From Octopus bimaculoides (Eukaryota), in contig NC_068989.1 of the NCBI RefSeq assembly GCF_001194135.2, positions 48,733,139 through 48,797,138 on the forward strand: DNA of 64,000 nucleotides. Reading direction: 5' to 3'. The notes under the pieces are model-generated. The model was not told the DNA's origin. It did no database searches and saw nothing but the letters and a program-made list of their open reading frames with translations. The position numbers and the translations under genes are program-made. Positions 2,220 to 62,150 of the stretch are shown piece after piece (positions within the stretch are counted from its first letter, which is position 1; each line of letters opens with the position of its first letter).

Positions 2220-2316
2220 TGTAACTCCTTTTAAATGTATTGAGTGCTTTCTTTTGTTTGTCCGTTCACTTATGTGTGTGTGAGAGATCATCATCATCAC
2301 TTAACATCCGTTTTCG

Positions 2317-3007: not shown

Positions 3008-3125
3008 AGGGGAGAGAGAGAGAGGGAGGGAGAGAGAGAGAGGGAGGGAGNNNNNNNNNNGAGAGATTGAGTGAGAGAGAGAGAGGGAGGGAGAGAGAGA
3101 GATTGAGTGAGAGAGAGAGAGAGAG
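3008..3125. repeat. (GA)n/(GGGA)n microsatellite spanning a 10-N gap (3051-3060)
   Basis: Direct reading of the sequence. Confidence 0.95.
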
Positions 3126-17127: not shown

Positions 17128-17258
17128 AGTATAGGTACAAAGCCACAGATTTGTGGGATGCATAAGTTGATTAAATCAACCAGATGTGTTAGACAAATAC
17201 CACATGACATTTCCCTCAAAGCTAATGATTCTGTCAATCTACTGTCATAATAATAATA

Positions 17259-17470
17259 GTTTCAAATTTTGCCACAAGGGCAGCAATTCTGGGAGAGGGG
17301 ATAAGTTAATTTCATCAACCTCAGTGTTCAACTGGTACTTATTTTATCAACCCTGAAAAGATGACAAGCAAAGTCGACCTTGATGAAATTTGAACTCAGA
17401 ATGTAAGGATGGACAAAATGCCACTAAACATTTTGCTCAGTGTGCTAACGATTCTGCCAGCTCACCACCT
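17259..17470 (-). mobile_element. Family B SINE
   Basis: Full-length copy with (AAT)n on both sides. Confidence 0.85.
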
Positions 17471-17488
17471 AATAATAATAATAATAAT

Positions 17489-17702
17489 GGTTTCAAATTT
17501 TGCCACAAGGGCAGCAATTTTGGAGGAATGGATGAATCGATTACATTGACCCCCAGTATTCAACTGGTACTTATTTTATCGACCCCGAAAGGATGAAAGG
17601 CAAAGTCAACCTCGGCAGAATTTGAACTCAGACTGTAGCAATGGACAAAATACTGCTAAGCATTTCACCCAGTGCGCTAACAATTCTGCCAGCTCGCCAC
17701 CT
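17489..17702 (-). mobile_element. Family B SINE, young copy
   Basis: Full length, retains CpGs (cgaccccgaaaggatgaaaggcaaagtcaacctcggcag). Joined to the previous copy by (AAT)6. Confidence 0.9.
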
Positions 17703-18269
17703 AATAATAACAGTAGTAATAATAACTGTTTCTAACAGGCATAAGGCCAATAATTTGGGCAGGGAGGGTTTGTCAGTTATATCAACCCTTACTTGATTAT
17801 TTCTTATTTTACTGACTCTGCAGAGATTAAAAGCAAGGTAGCAGGATTGGTTAAGCACTCGGCAATTCCTAGTGGTATGTAGTTATGATTTTTGTTCTAA
17901 GTTCCTATCACATTGGTGTCCATGATACCCTTTCACCATTCTGGCATTGCATTTAAATTACTGGGGTTGATTTAATCCATGGTACCTTCCTGCAAAATGT
18001 GAGGTTCTATGTCATTGTTACAAAGCAATACTGGTCCTTATGTGATTTAAGAGCACTGCTAACACAGTGGTACATGATAGTGACTTATAAAAAACATTTA
18101 ATATACATTATGGTTGCATAACAAAATATCGTGCTCCTACAAGTCATTAATAATGGTTAAAGGAAATTGATCTACAGATGGAGTTCCCTATAAGCCAGGC
18201 TTCATAATTTATATGGTTAATTCTACAAGGAGAAAAGAAAAAACATGATTATCACATCTTGTTCAAGAT

Positions 18270-18709: not shown

Positions 18710-19085
18710 TCCTATGCTACACCCACCAAAGGATTTTCTTTAATGCGACTCTCAATAACATAGGTTTTTTATTTGTTCACCCACCAAGATACTCTAACAT
18801 TACTCCCACCAAAATATATTTAATGTCATTCCCACCAAAATCCTCTTCCTAATGCTATTCTCACCAAGGACTCTTCATGCTGTTACTCTCACCATCATAC
18901 TTCTAAAGCTACTGCCACCAACATTACTACTGCTTCCTAACATTACTCCCACCAAGATACTCTTCCTAGTGTTACTGTCACCAATATACTCTTCCTAGTG
19001 TTACTGTCACCAATATACTCTTCCTAATATTACTCTCACCAAAGTATTCTTCTTAACACTACACCCACCAAGATAATCTTCTTAA
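18710..19085. repeat. Degenerate minisatellite, about 29-bp unit (tactcccaccaagatactcttcctaatgt), about 12 copies
   Basis: Near-exact 29-bp period at 18971-19028 (gttactgtcaccaatatactcttccta twice). The ccacca core recurs throughout. Confidence 0.75.
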
Positions 19086-21113
19086 TAATAAAAACAAAAA
19101 CAAAACTCTTGTTAGAGCATGTTACAATTTCGTTTGTCATGAAGACTAGAAAATCAGCAAGTCAATGCCTACGCACCTCTAAATGTCTGCCTTTTTATTT
19201 TCATTTATATTTGAATTGAGAAACTTTAAAATATACTGTCTTTGCAAGGAATATCAAATATGATAGAATTGATAGATTAAAATGCATTAACACACATTTC
19301 ACTATCATTTTTTTTATGCAGCAGGCATCACTAGGTATTTTCATTCTTTTAAGTTACGTTGCCACTCAGTGGTTATTCACTAAAATCCTATTTATATTTT
19401 CTGAATCATCCTAGGCCTGGTGGTAATGGTAAGACTATATTTTGTTGACAAGGTTTAATAAGACTAAAACAGAACTGGAGTTGTCACTGTATTGTCAAAG
19501 ATCAGATACACTTCATATTGCATTCCATTTTTAATTAATTTAAATTTTGAACTTGTATTCCTTACCTTTCTTGATCCAAATTAATCATTAAGATCATAAT
19601 TTTTATTCCACAACACTTGTGTAAATTTCTGGATTCTTTATATTATGTATTTTAGTGCCCACATTATCAACTGATGATGTGGTGGGTCATATCTTATTAA
19701 TAGCTCTGTCTTATGTATATGTCCTAGATATGTAGCATTCTATGGGACAGCCAAGTAGCTCTAAGTAAGTTACCACCAGGTAGTACAATTTACCTTTGTG
19801 AGTAATGATAGTGCAAATATACAAAGTAAGTCTCCTTGGCTGTCAATGTTTGAATCAACTCAAGTGAGATAGTTGCTTGCAGTAAACTAGTGTTCTTACC
19901 CAAGGGTCTCTTACAAAAACTAACATTAATAGCTGATTCAATGAAGCATTGTAGTTTATGAAAGGATTAAAATTTAACTGTATAACTCACAAATTACAGA
20001 TGAAGTATAATATCCCCAAAGGAAATCAGACCCCACTCCCCAACCTGGTCCCTGAACTAACCACTATGCTCACTATTCTCTCTACAGAACATCAACTTTC
20101 TGGGACCTTCTCTCTGGTCATGTCTTTCTAGCAAGACTTGGCTTGCAATAGTTTGAATGCAACATTAGTGACATCCAGCTAACCTATCTAGGAGGGCTTG
20201 TGAAGGTCAAGAGCACTGTCCCTTCCTTTAGACTCAACAAATAAAAATAAGAAATCTAAGGTCATTACTAACACACATTGCTTGCACTTCTTCATACTAA
20301 TACCCCAATATATCATCTCTAGTACCAGTATATCAACCATGAGTCTCTTTAATTAAATACTAATCTACATTGATGTTAGTATCTTCAATTCAGTATAGCT
20401 TAGCACCTTCATAACATTCCAGTTAGTAGACTAATCATTTGTGCATGAATAATAGCATGGTAATGAATCATAATACTCAATATCTATAATATACAACAGT
20501 AATTCAAATTCTCTAACAATAATTATTCTAATCAATTACTGTAGTTATATTAGCACATAAAGCCCTGAACCTTATAAAACTATTTCCTTACAACCAAATC
20601 ACAAACCAAACTCAACTTTAAAAAGTTTTTTAACTAAAGTGTGAATCACTCATTTTGCTACATAATGCAAGTTTACTCACCTTTGCATTGATTAGCTTCA
20701 CATATAACAAAAGAACTGCAACTCATGCACTATGTACAAGTGCTGCCACTACTAACATGATCATAAAGGAATTAACTGATAGATTGATAAACTACCCTCA
20801 GTTCCACTGTAGCCTAAATGCTGGTTGATTATTGTTCATCACCAATGACATTTCTATTGAGGAATTTAACCTTTATTTGATCATTCTTCTTGTATCATTT
20901 TTCAGCCTGCCTCCAGGGGAATATTGTTTTAGGGGAAATTCCAATCATGAACATTGAAGAATATAAAGACTAACATATTTTTAAAAGTTAAATGGAATTT
21001 CAGTGAAATGTCAGCGTATGATATATTCCTATATGAATATAGCAGCGTGTGTTTCTAAATACGTGCCTTAGATATGTAAACTCCCTCCCCCCTATAAGTG
21101 TGTATGTATGTAT

Positions 21114-21384
21114 NNNNNNNNNNNNNNNNNNNNNNNNNNNNNNNNNNNNNNNNNNNNNNNNNNNNNNNNNNNNNNNNNNNNNNNNNNNNNNNNNNNNNNN
21201 NNNNNNNNNNNNNNNNNNNNNNNNNNNNNNNNNNNNNNNNNNNNNNNNNNNNNNNNNNNNNNNNNNNNNNNNNNNNNNNNNNNNNNNNNNNNNNNNNNNN
21301 NNNNNNNNNNNNNNNNNNNNNNNNNNNNNNNNNNNNNNNNNNNNNNNNNNNNNNNNNNNNNNNNNNNNNNNNNNNNNNNNNNNN
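21114..21384. other. Assembly gap (N) flanked by (TA)n/(TATG)n
   Basis: Run of N. Confidence 1.
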
Positions 21385-22615: not shown

Positions 22616-22657
<42 letters not shown>

Positions 22658-22658
<1 letters not shown>

Positions 22659-22965
22659 CCTGACTGGCTCCTGTGCCAGTGGCATGTAAAAAGCACCATC
22701 CGAACATGACTGATGCCAGTACCCACTGACTGGCCCCCATGCTAGTGACACATAAAAAAGCACTATCTGAATGTGACTGGTGGCACATAAAAAGCACCCA
22801 CTACACTCTTGGAGTGGTTAGCAGTAGGAAGGGCATCCAGCTGTAGAAACATTGTCAGATCAGATTGGAGCCCAGTGCAGCCGCTGGCTCTCCAGGCCTC
22901 AGTCAAACCGTCCTACCCATGCCAACATGGAAAACAGATGTTAAACAATGATGATGATGATGATG
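22658..22965 (+). mobile_element. RTE 3' UTR fragment or RTE-tail SINE with about 2.5 subrepeats and (GAT)n tail
   Basis: taaaaagcacccactacactc..ggagtggtt...ggaagggcatccagctgtagaaac...catggaaaacagatgttaaac(aatg)atgatgatg, homologous to the reverse complement of 33375-33720. Confidence 0.8.
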
Positions 22966-33374: not shown

Positions 33375-34945
33375 CTTATCATCATCATCATTTAACGTCT
33401 GTTTTCCATTCTGGCATGGGTTGGACGGTTTGACTGAGGTCTGGAGAGCTAGCGGCTGCACCAGGCTTCAATCTGATCTGGCAATGTTTCTACAGCTGGA
33501 TGCCAACCACTCTGAGAGTGTAGTGGGTGCTTTTTACATGCCACCAGCACAGGATCCAGTCAGGCAGGCCTAGAAACAATCATGTTCAGATGGTGCTTTT
33601 TACATGTCACTGGCACAGGAGCCAGTCTTGGGGGTACTGGCATCAGCCACATTTGGTTGGTGCTTTTTACATGCTACCAGCATGGGAGCCAGTCAGGGAC
33701 ACTGGCCCTGGCTATGATATTGGTTTTACTCGACTCAACAGGTCTTCTTAAGCATATCATATCACCCAACACATCAGGGGTATTCTTAGCAAGGCCGGAC
33801 ATGCGTGGCTGCGATCTTACTTTAGTTGCCAGGTCTTCTCAATCACAGCATATCTCCAAAAGTCCCGGTCTCCTGTCATTGTTTCTGTGAGGCCCAATGT
33901 TCGAAGGTCATGCTTCTCCACCTCATCCCATGTCTTCCTGGGTCTACCTCTTCTACAGGTTCCTTCTACAGTTAGGGAGTGGTACTTCCTCACACAGTTG
34001 TCTTCATTCATACGTAACACATGGCCATACCAGTGCAGTCGCCTCTCTTCCACACCACATTTGATGCTTCCTATGCCCAACTTTTCTCTCAGGGCGCTTT
34101 ACACTCTGTTGTGTATGCACACTGACATTACACATCCAGCAGATCATACTAGCTTCATTTATTTCAAGCCTACGCATGTCTTCAGCATTCATGGCCCATG
34201 TTTCCCTACTGTGTAGCATCGCAGTTCGCACACATGCACCATACAGTCTACCTTTCACCCTGAGCGAGAGGCCCTTAGTTGCCAGCAGAGGTAGGAGCTC
34301 CCTGCACTTTGCCCAAGCTATTTTTACCCTAGTCGTTACACTCTCAGAGCAAGTGCCCCCACTACAGACTTGGTTGCCTAGGTAGCAGAAGCTATTAACT
34401 ACTTCTAGTTTCTCCCCCTGGCATGTGATGGAATCTGTTTTCTGTTCATCTTCTGTATTTATTGCCCTAGTGCAGCTGCCACACACAAAAACTATTTTCC
34501 CAGTTAACCTTCCTTTGATATTGCTGCACCTTTTATGTGTCCATAGGTTACATCAGATATATCGTATGGAGTTGTTATCCATGCCTTTTCTACAGATCGA
34601 ACAGGGTCATCTACCTGAAGAGGGTTGTGATTTGACAGCCTTCCTACTTACTAAGGCTTTGGTTTTTGCTAGTTTAACCCTAAGGTCCTTCAATTCTAGA
34701 CCTTGCTTCCACACCCTAAACTTTGTCCCCAATTCTGGCAGTGACTCAGCTATTAGAGCAAGGTCATCAGCATAGAGGAGCTCCTAGGGGCAGCCTGTCT
34801 TGAATTCCACTATTATTGCCTGGAGGACTATAATGAATAAGAGGAGGCTGAGGATTGATCCTTGATGAACCCCTACTTCTACTTGGAATTCTTCACTATA
34901 CTCGTTGCCAACCCTCGCCTTACTGACAGCATCCCTGTAATGAAA
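33375..34945 (-). mobile_element. 5'-truncated RTE-clade LINE: RT C-terminal half, 3' UTR with subrepeats, (GAT)n tail
   Basis: EEFQVEVGVHQGSILSLLLFIIVLQ...GCP*ELLYADDL...LEVVNSFCYLG...KGRLYGACVRTAMLH..ETW...RRLHWYGHVLRM...RRGRPRKTW. Several stops and frameshifts. Confidence 0.9.
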
Positions 34946-35761
34946 TCCGATTTCAGCTGAATGGGAGGGAAAGTAAGAAGTTGTGATATTCATGCTTTCA
35001 TAAAGTAAATTGGTTACAAATGAGAATTAGTAATTGCATCACACAGTTGGTTTGCAGTAAACTTACTGCAATATGAAAGCATCCAACACAAATATGTTAA
35101 TAATGATATTATCATCAGCCTGGGCTACAGTAGAAGACACTTGCCTAAAGTGCCACACAGTGGGACTGAGCCCCAAAACCTGAAATCATGTGGTTGGGAA
35201 GCAAGCGTCTTAACTACATAGCAATACTTTCATACACATACATACATACATAGACACACACTTATATATATATAACTGTATACCCACACAGAATATTTAT
35301 TAATATTGGCTATTTTCTTTGAAGTTTTACCAATACTGGCTTTTCAAAACACTGCTAAGCTGAAAATTTCCTTATATACAGTAGTAATATATGTAGTCAG
35401 TTGATATAGTAAGCAAAACCACAAAAGTGGTGTGGGCAGGAAGGAGAAGTCAGTGATGTAGTGGGTTTGTATATTTTACACAGAATGAAAGGAAGCTTTT
35501 CCATTCATAGAAGATCTACAGTGAAATGATGGATTGCTGTTAATAAGAAACATGAACCCTAAATCTAGATACACATTCCAGAAAGATCTCTGCCATTTCT
35601 CCCAACAATAAGGATTCAACATCACAGTAGAACAGTGAAGAAAATGAGTGAACTTTTTAGATATATATCATTGCACTTAGCTGATACCATAATTAGTATT
35701 GAGTCTTTTATTCAGTGCAAAGTGTACATAACTGCACAAATATATAAAAAACAAGCAAAAT

Positions 35762-44483: not shown

Positions 44484-44923
44484 NNNNNNNNNNNNNNNNN
44501 NNNNNNNNNNNNNNNNNNNNNNNNNNNNNNNNNNNNNNNNNNNNNNNNNNNNNNNNNNNNNNNNNNNNNNNNNNNNNNNNNNNNNNNNNNNNNNNNNNNN
44601 NNNNNNNNNNNNNNNNNNNNNNNNNNNNNNNNNNNNNNNNNNNNNNNNNNNNNNNNNNNNNNNNNNNNNNNNNNNNNNNNNNNNNNNNNNNNNNNNNNNN
44701 NNNNNNNNNNNNNNNNNNNNNNNNNNNNNNNNNNNNNNNNNNNNNNNNNNNNNNNNNNNNNNNNNNNNNNNNNNNNNNNNNNNNNNNNNNNNNNNNNNNN
44801 NNNNNNNNNNNNNNNNNNNNNNNNNNNNNNNNNNNNNNNNNNNNNNNNNNNNNNNNNNNNNNNNNNNNNNNNNNNNNNNNNNNNNNNNNNNNNNNNNNNN
44901 NNNNNNNNNNNNNNNNNNNNNNN
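44484..44923. other. Assembly gap (N) next to (TA)n
   Basis: Run of N. Confidence 1.
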
Positions 44924-47810: not shown

Positions 47811-48540
47811 CATTGTTCTTTCTTCAAGGTAGTTTGAGAGAAATTTGGCTACTATTTCTGTCAGGTTGCATGGCTGCATTGAGTTGACTTCAAATACTTT
47901 GCAGGCATAACTTAATTTACCAATTTATGAAAGGCAGATGATGATGATGATGCTGCCACCAATGCCACTGTTTCAATGTCTACATTTCTACATTCAGCTT
48001 TGTTGCAGTAGATATTACAGCAAAAACTGTTAAACCATTACATGTCAAGTGTTAACACTGTCAATAAAGAATAGGCATATGGATTTACTTGTCCTATTTT
48101 CTTGCTCATACACATGTGTATATATTCCCATCAGACCTGCCTTTATTTTGGCTATTTTTCTCATCTCCTTTAGGATGCAGTTGAACATTGTTGATTGACA
48201 GAGTAAAAACTGAATTCAGCTTTCTCTTTTTTTTCCAGTATGAAGCATAAATTGTTAAGACAAATTGACAATGTCTTAGCCGAGTATTATATAAATATTG
48301 CAATTCATAACTCAACTTGGTTCTTGTAAAAAAATAATATATAAGGTATGGTAGAGGTAGGGGGAACAGAATATAAGAAAGTCAAAGTAAGACATTTTGA
48401 TTTCTTTGGTATAAGAAATTCTTTAACTGTCACTTTACCCTTCCCGCTCACCATCTTCTATCCTTTGCATACCCTATTTGATGTTTTCTAGGAGCTACCT
48501 AACACCTAATTCTAGGTGCTTGGGTTATGACATCATATTC

Positions 48541-49081
48541 ACGACACATGAAATCTTTCGAGCGGGATCGTGCCAGAGCCCCTGGACCGGCTCATGTGAG
48601 GGCGACACGATATCTTTCGAGTGAGATCGTTACCAGTGCCCCTGGACTGACTCTTGTGCGGGTGACACATGAAATGTTTTGAGCGGGTTCGTTGCCAGTG
48701 CCCCTGGACTGGCTCATGTGCGGGCGACACATGAAATCTTTTGAGCGAGATCATTGCCGGTGCCCCTGGGCCGGCTCTTGTGCGGGTGACACATGAGGTT
48801 TATCGAGCGAGATCGTTGCCGGTGCCCCTGGGCTGACTCTTGTGCACGTGACACATGAAATGTTTTGAGCGGGTTCGTTGCCAGTGCCCCTGGACTGGCT
48901 CATGCGCGGGCGACGCCCATGGGCCGGCTCTTGTGCGGGTGACACATGAGGTTTTTCGAGCGAGATCGTTGCCGGTGCCCCTGGACTGGCTCATGTGCGG
49001 GCGACACATGAAATCTTTCGAGCGAGATCGTTGCCAGTGACCCTGGACTGGCTCTTGTGCGGGTGACACATGAAATGTTTT
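48541..49081 (+). repeat. 62-bp GC/CpG-rich minisatellite running into a gap
   Basis: Units start at 48543, 48604, 48664, 48726, 48788, 48850, 48912 (shortened), 48941, 49003 and 49065. Consensus gacacatgaaatctttcgagcgagatcgttgccagtgcccctggactggctcttgtgcgggt. Confidence 0.95.
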
Positions 49082-49947
49082 NNNNNNNNNNNNNNNNNNN
49101 NNNNNNNNNNNNNNNNNNNNNNNNNNNNNNNNNNNNNNNNNNNNNNNNNNNNNNNNNNNNNNNNNNNNNNNNNNNNNNNNNNNNNNNNNNNNNNNNNNNN
49201 NNNNNNNNNNNNNNNNNNNNNNNNNNNNNNNNNNNNNNNNNNNNNNNNNNNNNNNNNNNNNNNNNNNNNNNNNNNNNNNNNNNNNNNNNNNNNNNNNNNN
49301 NNNNNNNNNNNNNNNNNNNNNNNNNNNNNNNNNNNNNNNNNNNNNNNNNNNNNNNNNNNNNNNNNNNNNNNNNNNNNNNNNNNNNNNNNNNNNNNNNNNN
49401 NNNNNNNNNNNNNNNNNNNNNNNNNNNNNNNNNNNNNNNNNNNNNNNNNNNNNNNNNNNNNNNNNNNNNNNNNNNNNNNNNNNNNNNNNNNNNNNNNNNN
49501 NNNNNNNNNNNNNNNNNNNNNNNNNNNNNNNNNNNNNNNNNNNNNNNNNNNNNNNNNNNNNNNNNNNNNNNNNNNNNNNNNNNNNNNNNNNNNNNNNNNN
49601 NNNNNNNNNNNNNNNNNNNNNNNNNNNNNNNNNNNNNNNNNNNNNNNNNNNNNNNNNNNNNNNNNNNNNNNNNNNNNNNNNNNNNNNNNNNNNNNNNNNN
49701 NNNNNNNNNNNNNNNNNNNNNNNNNNNNNNNNNNNNNNNNNNNNNNNNNNNNNNNNNNNNNNNNNNNNNNNNNNNNNNNNNNNNNNNNNNNNNNNNNNNN
49801 NNNNNNNNNNNNNNNNNNNNNNNNNNNNNNNNNNNNNNNNNNNNNNNNNNNNNNNNNNNNNNNNNNNNNNNNNNNNNNNNNNNNNNNNNNNNNNNNNNNN
49901 NNNNNNNNNNNNNNNNNNNNNNNNNNNNNNNNNNNNNNNNNNNNNNN
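49082..49947. other. Assembly gap (N) inside the minisatellite
   Basis: Run of N. Confidence 1.
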
Positions 49948-49989
49948 TATATATATATATATATACCGCCTGACTGGCCTTTGTAGGGT

Positions 49990-50272
49990 TTTCGAGTGAG
50001 ATCGTTGCCAGTGCCCCTGGACTGGCTCTTGTGCGGGTGGCACATAAAAGACACCATTTCGAGCGTGGCCGTTTTCGTGCGGGTGACACGTAAAAGCACC
50101 CACTACACTCTCTGAGTGGTTGGCGTTAGGAAGGGCATCCAGCTGTAGAAACTCTGCCAAATTAGATTGGAGCCTGGTGTTGCCATCCGGTTTCACCAGT
50201 CCTCAGTCAAATCGTCCAACCCATGCTAGCATGGAAAGCGGACGTTAAATGATGATGATGATGATGATGATG
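49990..50272 (+). mobile_element. Last minisatellite unit(s) running into an RTE 3' tail ending in (GAT)n
   Basis: gccagtgcccctggactggctcttgtgcgggtggcacataaaag...gtaaaagcacccactacactctctgagtggttggcgttaggaagggcatccagc...ggacgttaaatgatgatgat. Confidence 0.85.
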
Positions 50273-50470: not shown

Positions 50471-52655
50471 GCTGTATCCCAAAGTTGTGTACTTAACTGT
50501 TGTTGATAAAGGTATTATACAACTAGTAATAGTTTCATTTCCCCTCATATGAATCTATATGTTCCATTCTATGTGAAGGCATGTAGTCTAATAGTGTTTG
50601 GCTTATGATTAAGGTTGAAGGTTCGATCCTGAACTGACTGGTGTCCTGTGTCTAGGAGCAAGGCATATAATTTTATATTGGTCTAGTCTACTTAGCAGAA
50701 AACGAATACAAGCCTGGAGTTCAAACAACCTTCTGTCTTCTCCAGCTGTTCCTTTCTTGATGTTCTGCAAGGTCAAGTGTCAGAGAGCTCAGAGAGTTTC
50801 TATTCATGCCCACTTAAACATGAATAGTGCTTCTGTTGCTAATATATACATATATATTTTTAGAGAACTCCTGTTTGCCCACAACCACATATGCATTTAA
50901 AGCAATCAACAAAAGTGTGGTGTAAGCTACCAGATCATACTTGCTTGTGAGTAATAGTTAAGCTCTTTTTTATATGTTATATATCCCATTCTACACTCTG
51001 ACTCGCCAATAGCAACAGAAAATCTACTGAACAAGCTAGATGTCAGTAACCATTATATCTTGCAGATGCATGAGCCTGTTGACTTGGAAATAGTTCAGTT
51101 TGAGAGTGTGGACAGAGAGTGAGAAATACAACATCCATTCAGTTGTTATTTACGTGTCTGTCTCATATAACAAATAAACAAGTAACTAAATCAAGTACTC
51201 CAGCATGGCCATAGTCAGTTGACTGAAACTTGCAAGACAGTAAAACAGCAATAGCAAATTTAGTATTTCTTCATATTCCAGTATGGTAAATAAACTATTC
51301 CATGTCATTATTAACTGCAATCTATATTTGTCTGTTGGACATAATGTAACATACTGGCCTTGTTAGAGATATTACTGCAGGAAACTACACACATAGTCAA
51401 TGAAATGTCATATTGAGAATTTCTGACATTTCCACTGTCTCCTTTGTATTTATCTGTTTATTTACTCTTTTTTTTTTCTTCTTTTTCTTTATTTTACTAA
51501 TTACATCGTTGCTTTCTGTGTAAACCAATACTGACGAGACCTAGTGGTGACTGAAGTCAATAAATTTGCCAGGACGATTTGTCATGCACGCTCTGAAGAC
51601 ATATATTGCTTCAAAATTACAGAACAAATTGCTTTTCCTCTTAACTGAGCAATCAAGTAATTATTGCTACATAAGATGAGAGATATATTAATTAATAAGC
51701 AAAGGAAATACTCCAAAGTAAAAAAATTAAAAAAAAAGGAAAAGAAAAACACAAGAAAAAGAAATGAAAAACAAGCAGAAAAAGATGGGTAACTTAACAG
51801 AAATGTTATTAAAGAGGAATGAAAAGATCTGACGTAATATTAGAGTAACACTGAAATTGGCTGGTTGCATCAGAACGTGAAGAACTAAAAGGAATAAGAA
51901 CTGACAACCAATTGTTATTAGAAGCTATCAATACATATGTATAACACAGTTACATACATAGACACAGAAAGACATACATAGACGCACACGTGCATGCATG
52001 CACACACACATCACAAGAGAAGGGAAAGAAACAGCATGTTCTTTCTTTCAGAGAGGTCTGTCTATTTGGTAGATCTAGGAAGTCAATATTGGATATTTTA
52101 ATTTTATGCTTCTCTTATTTACTTCTACTGTTCTGTTATTAGAATTAAGTTTCATGATTGTGCAGTTATTTTTAGAGGAGGTATGATGTTGGTGCTAGTG
52201 GTGGTGGTGAGCTTGCAAGTGGTACTGGCATTGGTGGAGTGGCATTGATGGTAATTGTGGTATTGGTGGGTGAGTGGTACTGGTGACAACAAGGTGGCAG
52301 AGTGGTGTTGGAGGCAGCAATGGTAGTGAATGATGTTATGAGATATGGCTATCAATAGACACATGCTTGTACTGGTTGTGTTATTATTAAATTTACAGAG
52401 AGTCTGTGATTGATTACTTTGAAAGATGGGTATAAATAACGTTATACGGTTTATCGTTTGAGATCTTACACTTCTAAGTTCAAATTTCACTAAAATCAAC
52501 AACAGTTTACGAGTACAAACCAGTCATGTATTGGTATCAAATCAAATGTACTTTGCTATTTTATGAATAGAATAAAAACCAAAAAAAAAAAACAGCAAAA
52601 AAAAAAGAAGTAACTTGTGACCAAAGCAATAATAATAATTCTTTCTCATTATTAG

Positions 52656-61782: not shown

Positions 61783-62150
61783 TTTTAAATCATTCATATA
61801 TGCATGTGCACACGTGGGTGTGCAAGAATATGTGCATATATATATATATATGCATGTGTGTATGTATNNNNNNNNNNATATATATGTATATATATGCAAG
61901 TGTGTATGTACGTATGTGTATGTATATATATAAATATATATATATGCATGTGTGCATGTATGCATGTATATATATACATATATATATGCATATATATACA
62001 TATATATCATCATCATCATCATCGTTGTTTAACGTCCACTTTCCATGCTAGCATGGGTTATATATGTATAATATATATATATGTATGTATAATATATATA
62101 TATATATATATGTATNNNNNNNNNNNNNNNNNNNNNNNNNNTATATATAC
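61735..62150. repeat. (TA)n/(TATG)n tract with two small N gaps
   Basis: Direct reading; gaps at 61868-61877 and 62116-62141. Confidence 0.9.

What the first reader, a model, noticed from the sequence alone, without database searches (positions are those of the whole stretch)
48541..50272. Minisatellite born from an RTE LINE 3' UTR subrepeat, with incipient higher-order structure
Seen in sequence: a 62-bp array runs across an 866-N gap and a (TA)n tract directly into the RTE tail. Its core (tgccagtgcccctggactggctcttgtgcgggtgacac.t.aaa) is homologous to the UTR subrepeats at 22.7 and 33.6 kb. Unit variants follow b-a-c, b-(a with 33-bp deletion)-c, a, b, suggesting a three-unit higher-order duplication. 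The array is CpG-dense in a CpG-poor background. Inference: a mobile VNTR in which a retroelement spreads a satellite seed that then amplifies.
Basis: partly seen in the sequence, partly recalled or inferred. Interest (0 to 1): 0.7.

Follow-up and report, generated by a model that had tools for sequence, protein, structure and literature searches.

The report
Octopus LINE-tail repeat expanded into minisatellite
A 62-bp repeat that normally occurs two to five times in the tail of an octopus jumping gene (an RTE-type LINE) has expanded here to at least nine copies; this is a real example of a well-known way that mobile elements seed tandem repeats, but the gap hides whether the array joins the visible element tail.

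Summary
The 62-bp array at 48542-49081 is real, with 9.3 units and TRF scores of 466-579. It contains one 186-bp three-unit duplication carrying a 33-bp deletion. It is CpG-rich (observed/expected 0.92, against 0.24 for the window).

An HMM built from its units hits only the 3' UTR subrepeat zones of an RTE-type LINE, in this window and in an Octopus vulgaris locus. That LINE normally carries about 2.3-4.5 such subrepeats. The array is therefore an expansion derived from the LINE UTR, not the reverse.

- **Continuity with the tail.** What lies right of the gap is the ordinary UTR of the young subfamily, not more array. The (TA)9 sits where TA tracts flank the 5' ends of three other copies in the window. 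The visible tail may be a separate insertion, and no sequence covering the gap was available.
- **Higher-order structure.** There is a single block duplication, and the periodicity breaks after unit 8.
- **CpG density.** It matches the CpG retention of other young copies (80-100%), so it most simply marks youth.

The genome-wide "mobile VNTR" idea could not be tested. TE-derived minisatellites are well documented, so this is a new member of a known kind and of low to moderate interest.

The parts
48542..49081 (+). 62-bp minisatellite, 9.3 units (U1-U10), cut off by the assembly gap. The unit is roughly GACACATGAAATCTTTCGAGCGAGATCGTTGCCAGTGCCCCTGGACTGGCTCTTGTGCGGGT.
   Evidence: TRF, unit dissection, nhmmer.
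48648..48986 (+). One 186-bp (three-unit) block duplication: first copy about 48648-48833, second copy about 48834-48986. The second copy lost 33 bp at 48914/48915.
   Evidence: Private variants shared at lag 3 in four consecutive unit pairs; U3/U6 are 98% identical. TRF period 186 at 87% and period 153 at 89%, against period 62 at 81%.
49082..49947 (.). Assembly gap (866 N, estimated length). Its content is unknown.
49948..49965 (.). (TA)9 tract at the left edge of the right-hand contig. It is probably target-site DNA flanking the 5' end of the truncated LINE copy.
   Evidence: The copy at 22654 is also preceded by (TA)13 at the same position in the subrepeat (GCCAG|TA|C) and followed by ATATATAT. 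Fragments at 62006-62062(-) and about 2287-2316(-) also abut TA tracts at their 5' ends. TA tracts cover 0.77% of the window. An unexpanded copy (P0122) departs from the window copy exactly here.
49966..50095 (+). Native 3' UTR subrepeats of the young copy: unit Y (49966-50006; 5'-cut and internally shortened), unit Z (50007-50073; 67 bp) and a last partial unit (50074-50095).
   Evidence: nhmmer 49989-50073, E 4e-18. The same Y-Z order occurs in P0122.
50096..50272 (+). Conserved 3' tail of the LINE, ending in (ATG)8 at 50249-50272. CpG retention is 4 of 5 sites, which marks a young copy.
   Evidence: BLAST to copies at 22779-22965 (82%), 33378-33550(-) (80%) and L001 16532-16820 (83%). CpG retention.
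22654..22965 (+). Old, CpG-decayed, 5'-truncated copy of the same LINE tail with 2.5 subrepeats. It is preceded by (TA)13 at 22628-22653.
33378..34960 (-). Old 5'-truncated LINE copy: a decayed C-terminal reverse-transcriptase region, about 100 bp of UTR leader, 3 subrepeats and the tail.
   Evidence: Best named homologues are Octopus bimaculoides (68%) and O. vulgaris (70%) reverse-transcriptase proteins.

Best explanation
The array is a young, locus-specific tandem expansion of the 60-67-bp subrepeat that an octopus RTE-type LINE family carries natively in its 3' UTR.

Shown:
- The LINE family has a reverse transcriptase with a PHD finger and an (ATG)n tail, and normally carries about 2.3-4.5 subrepeats.
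- The array unit is a hybrid of two neighbouring native units of the young, CpG-rich subfamily. Its first half matches unit Z (GCCAGTGCCCCTGGACTGGCTCTTGTGCGGGTG). Its second half matches unit Y (TTTCGAG(C/T)GAGATCGTT, lacking the GCACCA core).
- After the units had diversified, one 186-bp block of three units was duplicated and then lost 33 bp.

Inferred:
- A hybrid unit of this kind is the product expected from out-of-register exchange or replication slippage between adjacent subrepeats, repeated several times.
- The array belongs to the UTR of a 5'-truncated retrocopy.
- It is undecided whether that retrocopy is the visible tail at 49966-50272 or a second copy whose tail lies in the gap upstream of a TA-tract target. 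I lean slightly to the second.
- The array has no function of its own. Its CpG richness reflects recent origin.
For: - Array reality and period: TRF scores 466-579.
- Derivation from the LINE UTR: all nhmmer hits of the array-unit HMM in window + L001 + L002 (about 88 kb, both strands) fall in RTE UTR subrepeat zones. None falls elsewhere.
- Hybrid unit: alignment A1 shows the Z-like first half and the Y / L16_2-like second half. The first half is 91% identical to w50_Z and 83% to O. vulgaris L16_3. Array units form a single clade.
- Subrepeats predate the array: they occur in CpG-decayed and CpG-rich copies, in O. vulgaris and in a third source.
- The expansion is exceptional: P0122 shows an unexpanded copy of the same subfamily, running from the ORF end through X, Y and Z. 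The five O. vulgaris tails have at most 4.5 units.
- Block duplication: private variants are shared at lag 3.
- Youth: CpG retention is 80-100% in young tails and 20-50% in old ones. The array keeps about three quarters of its consensus CpG sites (counted by hand from the alignment).
- No function of its own: no unusual structure (fold z = -0.55) and no Rfam match.
Against: - The gap hides the junction, so membership of the array in any particular retrocopy is inferred.
- No target-site duplication links 48542 with 50272, and the left flank has no LINE-body similarity.
- Units differ by 10-23% although CpGs are largely intact. Only 9 of 26 variable columns are CpG-context transitions. Simple in-situ decay does not explain this. 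Part of the diversity may have been inherited from already different UTR units, or the locus may be hypomethylated.
- Only one array was seen, so whether this recurs is unknown.
- The clade name 'RTE' rests on literature and on tail features, not on a phylogeny done here.
Confidence: 0.8

Rival explanations
1. One reading: one continuous 5'-truncated element in which the array runs through the gap and the (TA)n tract straight into the visible tail. The TA tract would be an internal microsatellite.
For: - The array and the tail have the same orientation and lie less than 1 kb apart.
- The tail is the only young copy of this subfamily in 64 kb, so adjacency by chance is unlikely (roughly 1-2% by my estimate).
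- Both the array and the tail are CpG-rich.
- The array would sit upstream of unit Y, where unit X lies in the unexpanded copy P0122.
Against: - The (TA)9 replaces the 5' arm of unit Y exactly at GCCAG|TA|C. This is the same place where the old copy at 22654 begins after a genomic (TG)n(TA)13 tract with no LINE sequence upstream.
- Two further tail fragments also abut TA tracts at their 5' ends. TA tracts cover only 0.77% of the window.
- Growing (TA)9 from a single internal TA is unlikely.
- No target-site duplication pairs 48542 with 50272.
- The array-like unit right of the gap is the subfamily's normal Y2-Z1 junction, not evidence that the array continues.
Confidence: 0.35
2. Two insertions at one TA-rich hotspot. 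The array belongs to an upstream retrocopy whose tail and (ATG)n lie inside the gap. The visible tail (49966-50272) is a second, independently 5'-truncated copy that landed in the remaining TA tract.
For: - TA tracts or TA-rich sequence flank four of the 5'-truncated copies or fragments in the window.
- 3' flanks are AT-rich in the window, L001 and L002.
- The estimated gap of 866 bp is large enough for the rest of an array plus about 300 bp of UTR and tail.
Against: - It requires two young insertions of the same subfamily within 1 kb.
- Nothing inside the gap can be seen.
- None of the O. vulgaris L001 copies shows a TA tract at its 5' junction.
Confidence: 0.4
3. Assembly artefact. The array contig and the tail contig are wrongly scaffolded (or are haplotype variants), or the array length is distorted by repeat collapse.
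For: - The left contig ends inside the array and the right contig begins inside a TA tract.
- Every gap in the window is flanked by a microsatellite, a hallmark of a short-read scaffold.
Against: - 540 bp of array with distinct, ordered unit variants and a clean unique 5' flank were assembled. Collapse would more likely produce near-identical units.
- Orientation and subfamily agree on both sides of the gap.
Confidence: 0.1
4. Reverse direction: a pre-existing satellite was captured by the LINE, and the UTR subrepeats derive from the array.
For: None specific. Array and UTR units are homologous, which by itself has no direction.
Against: - Subrepeats are present in all copies examined, including CpG-decayed ones and copies from other species.
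- Array units are a single derived clade. They lack the conserved GCACCA core of the UTR units and match only the young subfamily closely.
Confidence: 0.03
5. The array is a functional CpG island, regulatory element or coding repeat. The minus strand is open for more than 93 codons.
For: - It meets the numerical CpG-island criteria (GC 58%, o/e 0.92, at least 540 bp).
- Long antisense ORFs run through it.
- CpG loss is not strongly elevated over other changes.
Against: - Young copies of the LINE tail have the same CpG retention.
- An exhaustive protein search finds only three relatives, all translations of antisense LINE UTR or tail.
- The 62-bp period shifts the reading frame at every unit.
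- No Rfam match and no unusual structure.
Confidence: 0.03

Closest known systems
TE-derived minisatellites and satellites that grow from internal or UTR tandem repeats of retroelements: Ogre 3' UTR giving PisTR-A, HeT-A/TART 3' UTR giving 18HT, L1 3' end giving the common cetacean satellite, CR1 3' UTR giving HinfI. About 23% of human tandem arrays are TE-derived (review PMC9659126).
   Same: A short repeat in the non-coding 3' part of a retroelement is amplified into a longer tandem array. The units are recognisably homologous to the element.
   Different: The donor here is an octopus RTE-type LINE, which is not listed among the reviewed cases. The array is small (at least 9 units at one locus), not a chromosomal satellite. 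Spread to other loci is not shown.
Human SVA and its internal VNTR (from my own knowledge).
   Same: A variable-number tandem repeat inside a non-LTR retroelement could in principle be carried to new loci and change length there.
   Different: In SVA the VNTR is a constant, defining part of every copy. Here normal copies have 2.3-4.5 subrepeats and only this locus is expanded. Mobility of the expanded form is unproven.
Microsatellite families generated by RTE retrotransposons in Lepidoptera (PMC2887409).
   Same: RTE-type elements are mostly 5'-truncated 3' ends carrying simple repeats in or after the 3' UTR, and they disperse repeat-flanking families through the genome. Here (ATG)n ends every copy.
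   Different: Those are di- and tri-nucleotide repeats in a very short UTR. Here the unit is 62 bp within a UTR of about 450 bp. That paper reports no target specificity, whereas copies in this window cluster at TA tracts.
Satellite-like arrays carried by mobile elements in molluscs: Helentron- and MITE-borne arrays in oysters and clams (PMC7492417; table in PMC9659126).
   Same: Same phylum, and the same idea of short dispersed arrays linked to a mobile element.
   Different: Those carriers are DNA transposons (Helentron, pearl/CvA MITEs). This carrier is a LINE, and dispersal of arrays is not shown.
RTE-2_OV and the RTE element of O. bimaculoides (PMC9115989).
   Same: Octopus RTE-clade LINEs with recent activity. 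The authors note that a repeat makes up most of the 3' UTR.
   Different: That element is described with a C2H2 finger and a 'microsatellite' UTR. The element here has a PHD finger in its C-terminal region and 60-67-bp subrepeats, so it may be another family.

Membership tests
TE-derived minisatellite (expansion of a retroelement's internal repeat) | Head-to-tail array of several units with a period of 10-100 bp | tested here: met
   9.3 units of 62 bp; TRF scores 466-579.
TE-derived minisatellite (expansion of a retroelement's internal repeat) | Unit homologous to a defined segment of a transposable element | tested here: met
   Array-unit HMM hits only LINE 3' UTR subrepeat zones (E 4e-18 to 0.0085 in the window, 2e-19 in L001). 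Alignment A1.
TE-derived minisatellite (expansion of a retroelement's internal repeat) | The element's segment is ancestral and the array is derived | tested here: met
   Subrepeats are present in old and young copies and in other species. Array units form one derived clade closest to the young subfamily. An unexpanded same-subfamily copy exists (P0122).
TE-derived minisatellite (expansion of a retroelement's internal repeat) | Array physically attached to the element copy it grew from | tested here: inconclusive
   A gap and a (TA)9 tract separate the array from the visible tail. No TSD. TA tracts mark the 5' ends of other copies.
Mobile VNTR / dispersed satellite seed (SVA-like behaviour) | Expanded arrays at several loci, each linked to the element | not testable with these tools
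   No octopus genome collection was searchable by DNA. Proxies were negative: translated-array searches gave 2 and 3 hits, none from an array; 0 hits in metagenome and viral scans; no expansion among 5 tails in L001.
Mobile VNTR / dispersed satellite seed (SVA-like behaviour) | Copy number of the internal repeat varies among copies or alleles | tested here: inconclusive
   Between copies and subfamilies there are 2.3-4.5 units, against at least 9.3 here. Part of that range reflects 5' truncation. Allelic variation is not testable.
Higher-order repeat (HOR) satellite | Multi-unit blocks more alike than neighbouring units | tested here: met
   Lag-3 pairs share private variants. U3/U6 are 98% identical against 75-89% between neighbouring units.
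Higher-order repeat (HOR) satellite | Sustained periodicity over three or more blocks | tested here: not met
   Only two block copies are present. U9 and U10 do not follow the lag-3 pattern. The rest of the array is unread.
RTE-clade LINE | Reverse-transcriptase ORF of non-LTR type | tested here: met
   The decayed fragment at 33.8-34.96 kb(-) has a weak RVT_1 match. It has 524 homologues with RVT_1 (+PHD), the best named being Octopus RT proteins at 68-70%.
RTE-clade LINE | Single ORF with an N-terminal AP-type endonuclease; RT placed in the RTE clade by phylogeny | not tested
   No full-length copy exists in the window or in L001, and no reference set of LINE clades was available. The label rests on the literature for octopus RTEs (PMC9115989) and on the RLHWYGHV...GRPRKTW C-terminal motif, which I recall as typical of RTE elements.
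RTE-clade LINE | 3' end made of a short simple repeat instead of poly(A); many 5'-truncated copies | tested here: met
   (ATG)n or (GAT)n ends every copy in the window, L001 and L002. All copies seen are 5'-truncated.
CpG island | Length over 200 bp, GC over 50%, CpG o/e over 0.6 | tested here: met
   541 bp, GC 58%, o/e 0.92.
CpG island | Kept CpG-rich by lack of germline methylation, typically at a promoter | not testable with these tools
   No methylation data. Young LINE tails keep 80-100% of their CpGs anyway, so youth is sufficient to explain the density.

The most novel reading that the evidence does not exclude
The young subfamily of this octopus RTE-type LINE may behave as a true mobile VNTR. 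Master copies with expanded 62-bp UTR arrays would be retrotransposed, preferentially into (TA)n microsatellites, seeding CpG-rich minisatellites at many loci that then grow by block duplication. That would be an SVA-like system in a cephalopod, combined with a microsatellite target preference not described for RTE elements.
Probability: 0.15. Interest if true: 0.5.

Novelty: new member of a known kind. Interest (0 to 1): 0.25.

Why it matters
The finding adds a LINE-borne case in a cephalopod to the catalogue of tandem repeats born from transposable elements. It catches the process at an early stage: the native subrepeats, a hybrid unit, one block duplication and one deletion are all still readable.

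On the practical side, arrays like this and the TA tracts next to them are the places where short-read octopus assemblies break. Antisense translations of the LINE tail have also entered protein databases as "uncharacterized proteins".

It does not change how LINEs or satellites are understood.

Tried and rejected
**Closing the gap or finding other arrays**
- Look-ups of encoding contigs for P0121, P0072 and P0217 found nothing on record.
- Exact-pattern scans for the array unit found nothing in metagenome or viral contigs. A scan for the conserved tail found nothing in metagenome contigs.
- The word-indexed search and the exhaustive search with the translated array returned only antisense translations of ordinary LINE UTRs or tails.
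- A second homologue search seeded with the O. vulgaris RT returned almost no further octopus proteins. Only one 20.9-kb O. vulgaris locus (L001) and one 2.7-kb contig (L002) could be used as outside samples.

**Target-site duplications**
- No shared word of 6 bp or more links 48542 with 50272, or the TA junction with 50272. About 30% of random 40-mer pairs share a 6-mer, and other copies also lack clear TSDs, so this test is uninformative.

**RNA or DNA structure**
- The small hairpins GCCAGT...ACTGGC and ATGTG...CACAT exist, but the fold is no better than shuffles (z = -0.55).
- I did not run a covariation test. In these palindromic CpG-containing stems, CpG decay on both arms mimics compensatory change, so I would not count apparent covariation as evidence.

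**Other checks**
- The Rfam scan gave only sub-threshold hits on a TA repeat.
- ARAGORN found no tRNA.
- I rejected the idea that the array grew between units Y and Z of the visible copy. The array lies upstream of Y, and Y in that copy is shortened where the array units are not.
Full report
**1. What is in the sequence**

Positions 48542-49081 hold a head-to-tail array of a 62-bp unit. TRF reports:
- period 62: 6.1 + 2.7 copies, 81-87% matches, scores 466 and 255;
- period 186: 87% matches, score 579;
- period 153: 89% matches, score 500.

Cutting the array at GACAC gives ten units, U1-U10. U7 is 29 bp long because of a 33-bp deletion. U10 is cut after 17 bp by the N run at 49082-49947.

The window has GC 34.4% and CpG observed/expected 0.24. 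The array has GC 58% and o/e 0.92.

Right of the gap the sequence reads as follows:
- (TA)9 at 49948-49965;
- a 41-bp partial subrepeat, unit Y, at 49966-50006;
- a 67-bp subrepeat, unit Z, at 50007-50073;
- a 22-bp partial subrepeat at 50074-50095;
- a conserved tail of about 150 bp;
- (ATG)8 at 50249-50272.

**2. The gap, tested first**

The letters on the two sides cannot be shown to be continuous. The left contig stops inside the array and the right contig starts inside a TA tract. All six N runs in the window are flanked by microsatellites, four of them by (TA)n. This is the usual failure mode of a short-read scaffold, and the 866-bp length is only an estimate.

I could not obtain any other sequence of this locus. 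Contig look-ups for related proteins failed. Pattern scans of the metagenome and viral collections found nothing.

What lies right of the gap is not a continuation of the array. The one array-like stretch (49990-50049, 92-96% identical to the array consensus) is the native junction between units Y and Z of this subfamily. The same Y-Z arrangement, including Y's internal shortening, is encoded on the antisense strand in the UniRef protein P0122 from Octopus bimaculoides. P0122 runs from the LINE ORF end through units X, Y and Z without any array. It is 93% identical to the window's antisense translation up to the exact point where the (TA)9 begins.

**3. What the element is**

The tail recurs in the window at 22654-22965 (+, 82%) and at 33378-33550 (-, 80%). 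Short fragments lie near 1.25, 2.3, 3.9 and 62.0 kb.

The 33-kb copy continues upstream into a decayed C-terminal reverse-transcriptase region. Its conceptual translation finds 524 homologues. The best named ones are O. bimaculoides (68%) and O. vulgaris (70%) RT proteins. Most carry RVT_1 plus a PHD finger. The host is therefore an octopod.

A 20.9-kb O. vulgaris locus (L001, OX597814.1) contains five copies of the tail. Every copy has, between the ORF end and the tail, 2.3-4.5 subrepeats of 60-67 bp. The consensus is GCCAGTGCCGCCTGACTGGCTCC.GTGCCGGTGGCACGTAAAAAGCACCATCCGAACGTGGCCGTT. A 2.7-kb contig from another source (L002) shows the same design.

All copies end in (ATG)n or (GAT)n and all are 5'-truncated. 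These features fit RTE-type LINEs as described for Lepidoptera (PMC2887409) and octopus (PMC9115989). I did not test the clade assignment by phylogeny, and no full-length copy with the endonuclease was at hand.

**4. Relation of the array to the UTR subrepeats**

An HMM built from the eight full-length array units was run with nhmmer against the window, L001 and L002. Outside the array it hit:
- 49989-50073, E 4e-18;
- L001 16403-16656, E down to 2e-19;
- 33544-33645(-), E 4e-7;
- 22705-22756, E 0.0085;
- weaker matches.

Every hit, down to E of about 3, lies in a LINE UTR subrepeat zone. None lies anywhere else.

In the alignment of 20 units:
- The first half of the array units (GCCAGTGCCCCTGGACTGGCTCTTGTGCGGGTG) is 91% identical to unit Z of the adjacent young copy. 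It is 83% identical to the equivalent O. vulgaris unit and 51-75% identical to all others.
- The second half (ACACATGAAATCTTTCGAGCGAGATCGTT) lacks the conserved GCACCA core. It matches the second half of unit Y (TTTTCGAGTGAGATCGTT) and of O. vulgaris unit L16_2.

A unit made of 'second half of one native unit plus first half of the next' is what out-of-register exchange or slippage between adjacent subrepeats produces. This step is inference.

The array units form a single clade. The subrepeats occur in old, CpG-decayed copies and in other species. The direction is therefore LINE UTR to array, not the reverse.

**5. The 'higher-order structure'**

Private variants are shared at a lag of three units in four consecutive pairs:
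- U2/U5: A49;
- U3/U6: G13, T17, G23, T25 (98% identical);
- U4/U7: G45, C47;
- U5/U8: G10, G11, T13, G34.

This defines one duplication of a 186-bp block, about 48648-48833 copied to 48834-48986, followed by a 33-bp deletion. U9 and U10 do not follow the pattern. What can be read is a single segmental duplication, not a sustained higher-order repeat. 'Incipient' is a fair word, but no more than that.

The 'AGG' variant of units U5 and U8 resembles native unit Y (AGGGTTTTCGAG). Part of the diversity among units may therefore have been inherited from already different UTR units rather than arising in place.

**6. CpG density**

I scored ancestral CpG sites in the aligned tails of eight copies.
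- Young copies keep 80-100% of them: the 50-kb copy and L001 copies at 16.4, 11.4 and 3.7 kb.
- Old copies keep 20-50%: the 22-kb and 33-kb copies and L001 copies at 2.9 and 14.8 kb.

The array keeps about three quarters of its consensus CpG sites (counted by hand from the alignment). CpG richness is therefore the normal state of recent copies of this element in a CpG-poor genome.

One point stays open. Units differ by 10-23%, yet only 9 of 26 variable columns are CpG-context transitions. Simple decay under methylation would not give this. Inherited unit diversity or local hypomethylation could, and I cannot separate the two.

**7. The TA tract and continuity**

- The old copy at 22654 starts right after a genomic (TG)n(TA)13 tract. 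The start is at the same place within a subrepeat (GCCAG|TA|C) as the 50-kb copy. It is followed by ATATATAT, a plausible target-site duplication.
- Tail fragments at 62006-62062(-) and about 2287-2316(-) also abut TA-rich tracts at their 5' ends.
- Perfect (TA) tracts of six or more units cover 0.77% of the window. The chance that a random junction falls within 6 bp of one is about 1%.
- 3' flanks are AT-rich in all three sources.

The simplest reading is an AT/TA-rich target preference, with 5' joining at the TA of GCCAGTAC. That makes the (TA)9 flanking DNA of a separately truncated copy. This argues against the array running 'directly into' the visible tail.

Against that reading: the array and the only young tail in 64 kb lie within 1 kb in the same orientation, and the O. 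vulgaris copies in L001 show no TA tract at their 5' ends.

My estimates for the arrangement are:

| Arrangement | Probability |
|---|---|
| Two insertions at a TA hotspot, with the array's own tail hidden in the gap | about 0.40 |
| One continuous element with an internal TA tract | about 0.35 |
| Misjoin or other assembly artefact | about 0.10 |
| An orphan array unconnected to any adjacent tail | the remainder |

No TSD links 48542 with 50272, and the left flank has no LINE similarity.

**8. Function**

- The antisense strand is open through the array. However, the 62-bp period shifts the reading frame at every unit.
- An exhaustive phmmer search of 1.84 billion representative proteins returned only three relatives. 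All are antisense translations of ordinary LINE UTRs or tails, and one is exonised in a 478-aa gene model.
- Folding is unremarkable and Rfam has nothing.
- The array units have lost the most conserved core of the native subrepeat.

I conclude that the array has no function of its own.

**9. Comparison with what is known**

Retroelement UTR repeats growing into minisatellites or satellites is well documented. Reviewed cases include Ogre/PisTR-A, HeT-A-TART/18HT, the L1 3' end giving the cetacean satellite, and CR1/HinfI. About 23% of human tandem arrays are TE-derived (review PMC9659126). RTE elements are known generators of simple-repeat families (PMC2887409). In molluscs, the known carriers of satellite-like arrays are DNA transposons (PMC7492417).

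I found no report of this octopus case. It is a new member of a known kind.

The broader claim of a retroelement that spreads satellite seeds genome-wide could not be tested here, and the few proxies were negative.

**10. Verdict**

- The core interpretation, a minisatellite derived from the LINE UTR subrepeat, is well supported.
- The continuity, higher-order-repeat and 'mobile VNTR' extensions are unproven or weaker than stated.
- Interest is low to moderate.

Noticed in passing
window 22628-22653, 49948-49965, 2317-2364, 62059-62115; L002 about 2028-2036: 5'-truncated copies of the LINE tail sit immediately 3' of (TA)n or TA-rich tracts in 4 cases in this window. Two of them start at the same GCCAG|TA|C position of a subrepeat. 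3' flanks are AT-rich or TA repeats. This suggests a TA-microsatellite target preference, or capture at TA-tract breaks. The Lepidoptera RTE paper (PMC2887409) reports no target specificity for RTE elements. None of the O. vulgaris L001 copies shows the TA tract.
   Followed up: partly
window gaps 3051-3060, 21114-21384, 44484-44923, 49082-49947, 61868-61877, 62116-62141: Every N run is flanked by a microsatellite: (GA)n once, and TA/TG-type tracts five times. Gaps in this scaffold mark simple-repeat assembly failures, and their lengths should not be trusted.
   Followed up: yes
window 48539-50196 minus strand; proteins P0121, P0122, P0217: The antisense strand of the LINE UTR, tail and array is open for long stretches. 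UniRef 'uncharacterized proteins' of O. bimaculoides (A0A0L8HVX5, A0A0L8FUL9) are such translations. A 478-aa gene model (P0217) contains an exonised antisense LINE tail. These are probably annotation artefacts or exonisation.
   Followed up: partly
window 33817-34993 (-); homologues: The C-terminal part of the LINE ORF carries a PHD finger in most homologues. Relatives at 45-58% identity occur in Hydractinia, Mercenaria, Branchiostoma and many marine metagenome contigs. The lineage is widespread in marine animals, and its clade placement was not checked.
   Followed up: no
subrepeat stems GCCAGT...ACTGGC and CGTGCC...GGCACG, e.g. window 48756-48775 and L001 16600-16640: The small palindromic stems contain CpGs on both arms. 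Independent CpG decay (CG to CA on one arm, CG to TG on the other) keeps base pairing and mimics compensatory change. Apparent covariation here is not evidence of a selected RNA structure.
   Followed up: partly
window 17247-17721: A 232-bp unit is present in 2.1 tandem copies (81% matches, TRF score 640). It looks like two adjacent copies of an interspersed repeat.
   Followed up: no
window 18800-19086: A separate 29-bp minisatellite (10 copies, 72% matches) unrelated to the LINE.
   Followed up: no
window 50570-50690 (+) and 35110-35225 (-): Sequences with a box-B-like GGTTCGATCC motif that look like heads of tRNA-derived SINEs. ARAGORN calls no tRNA.
   Followed up: no
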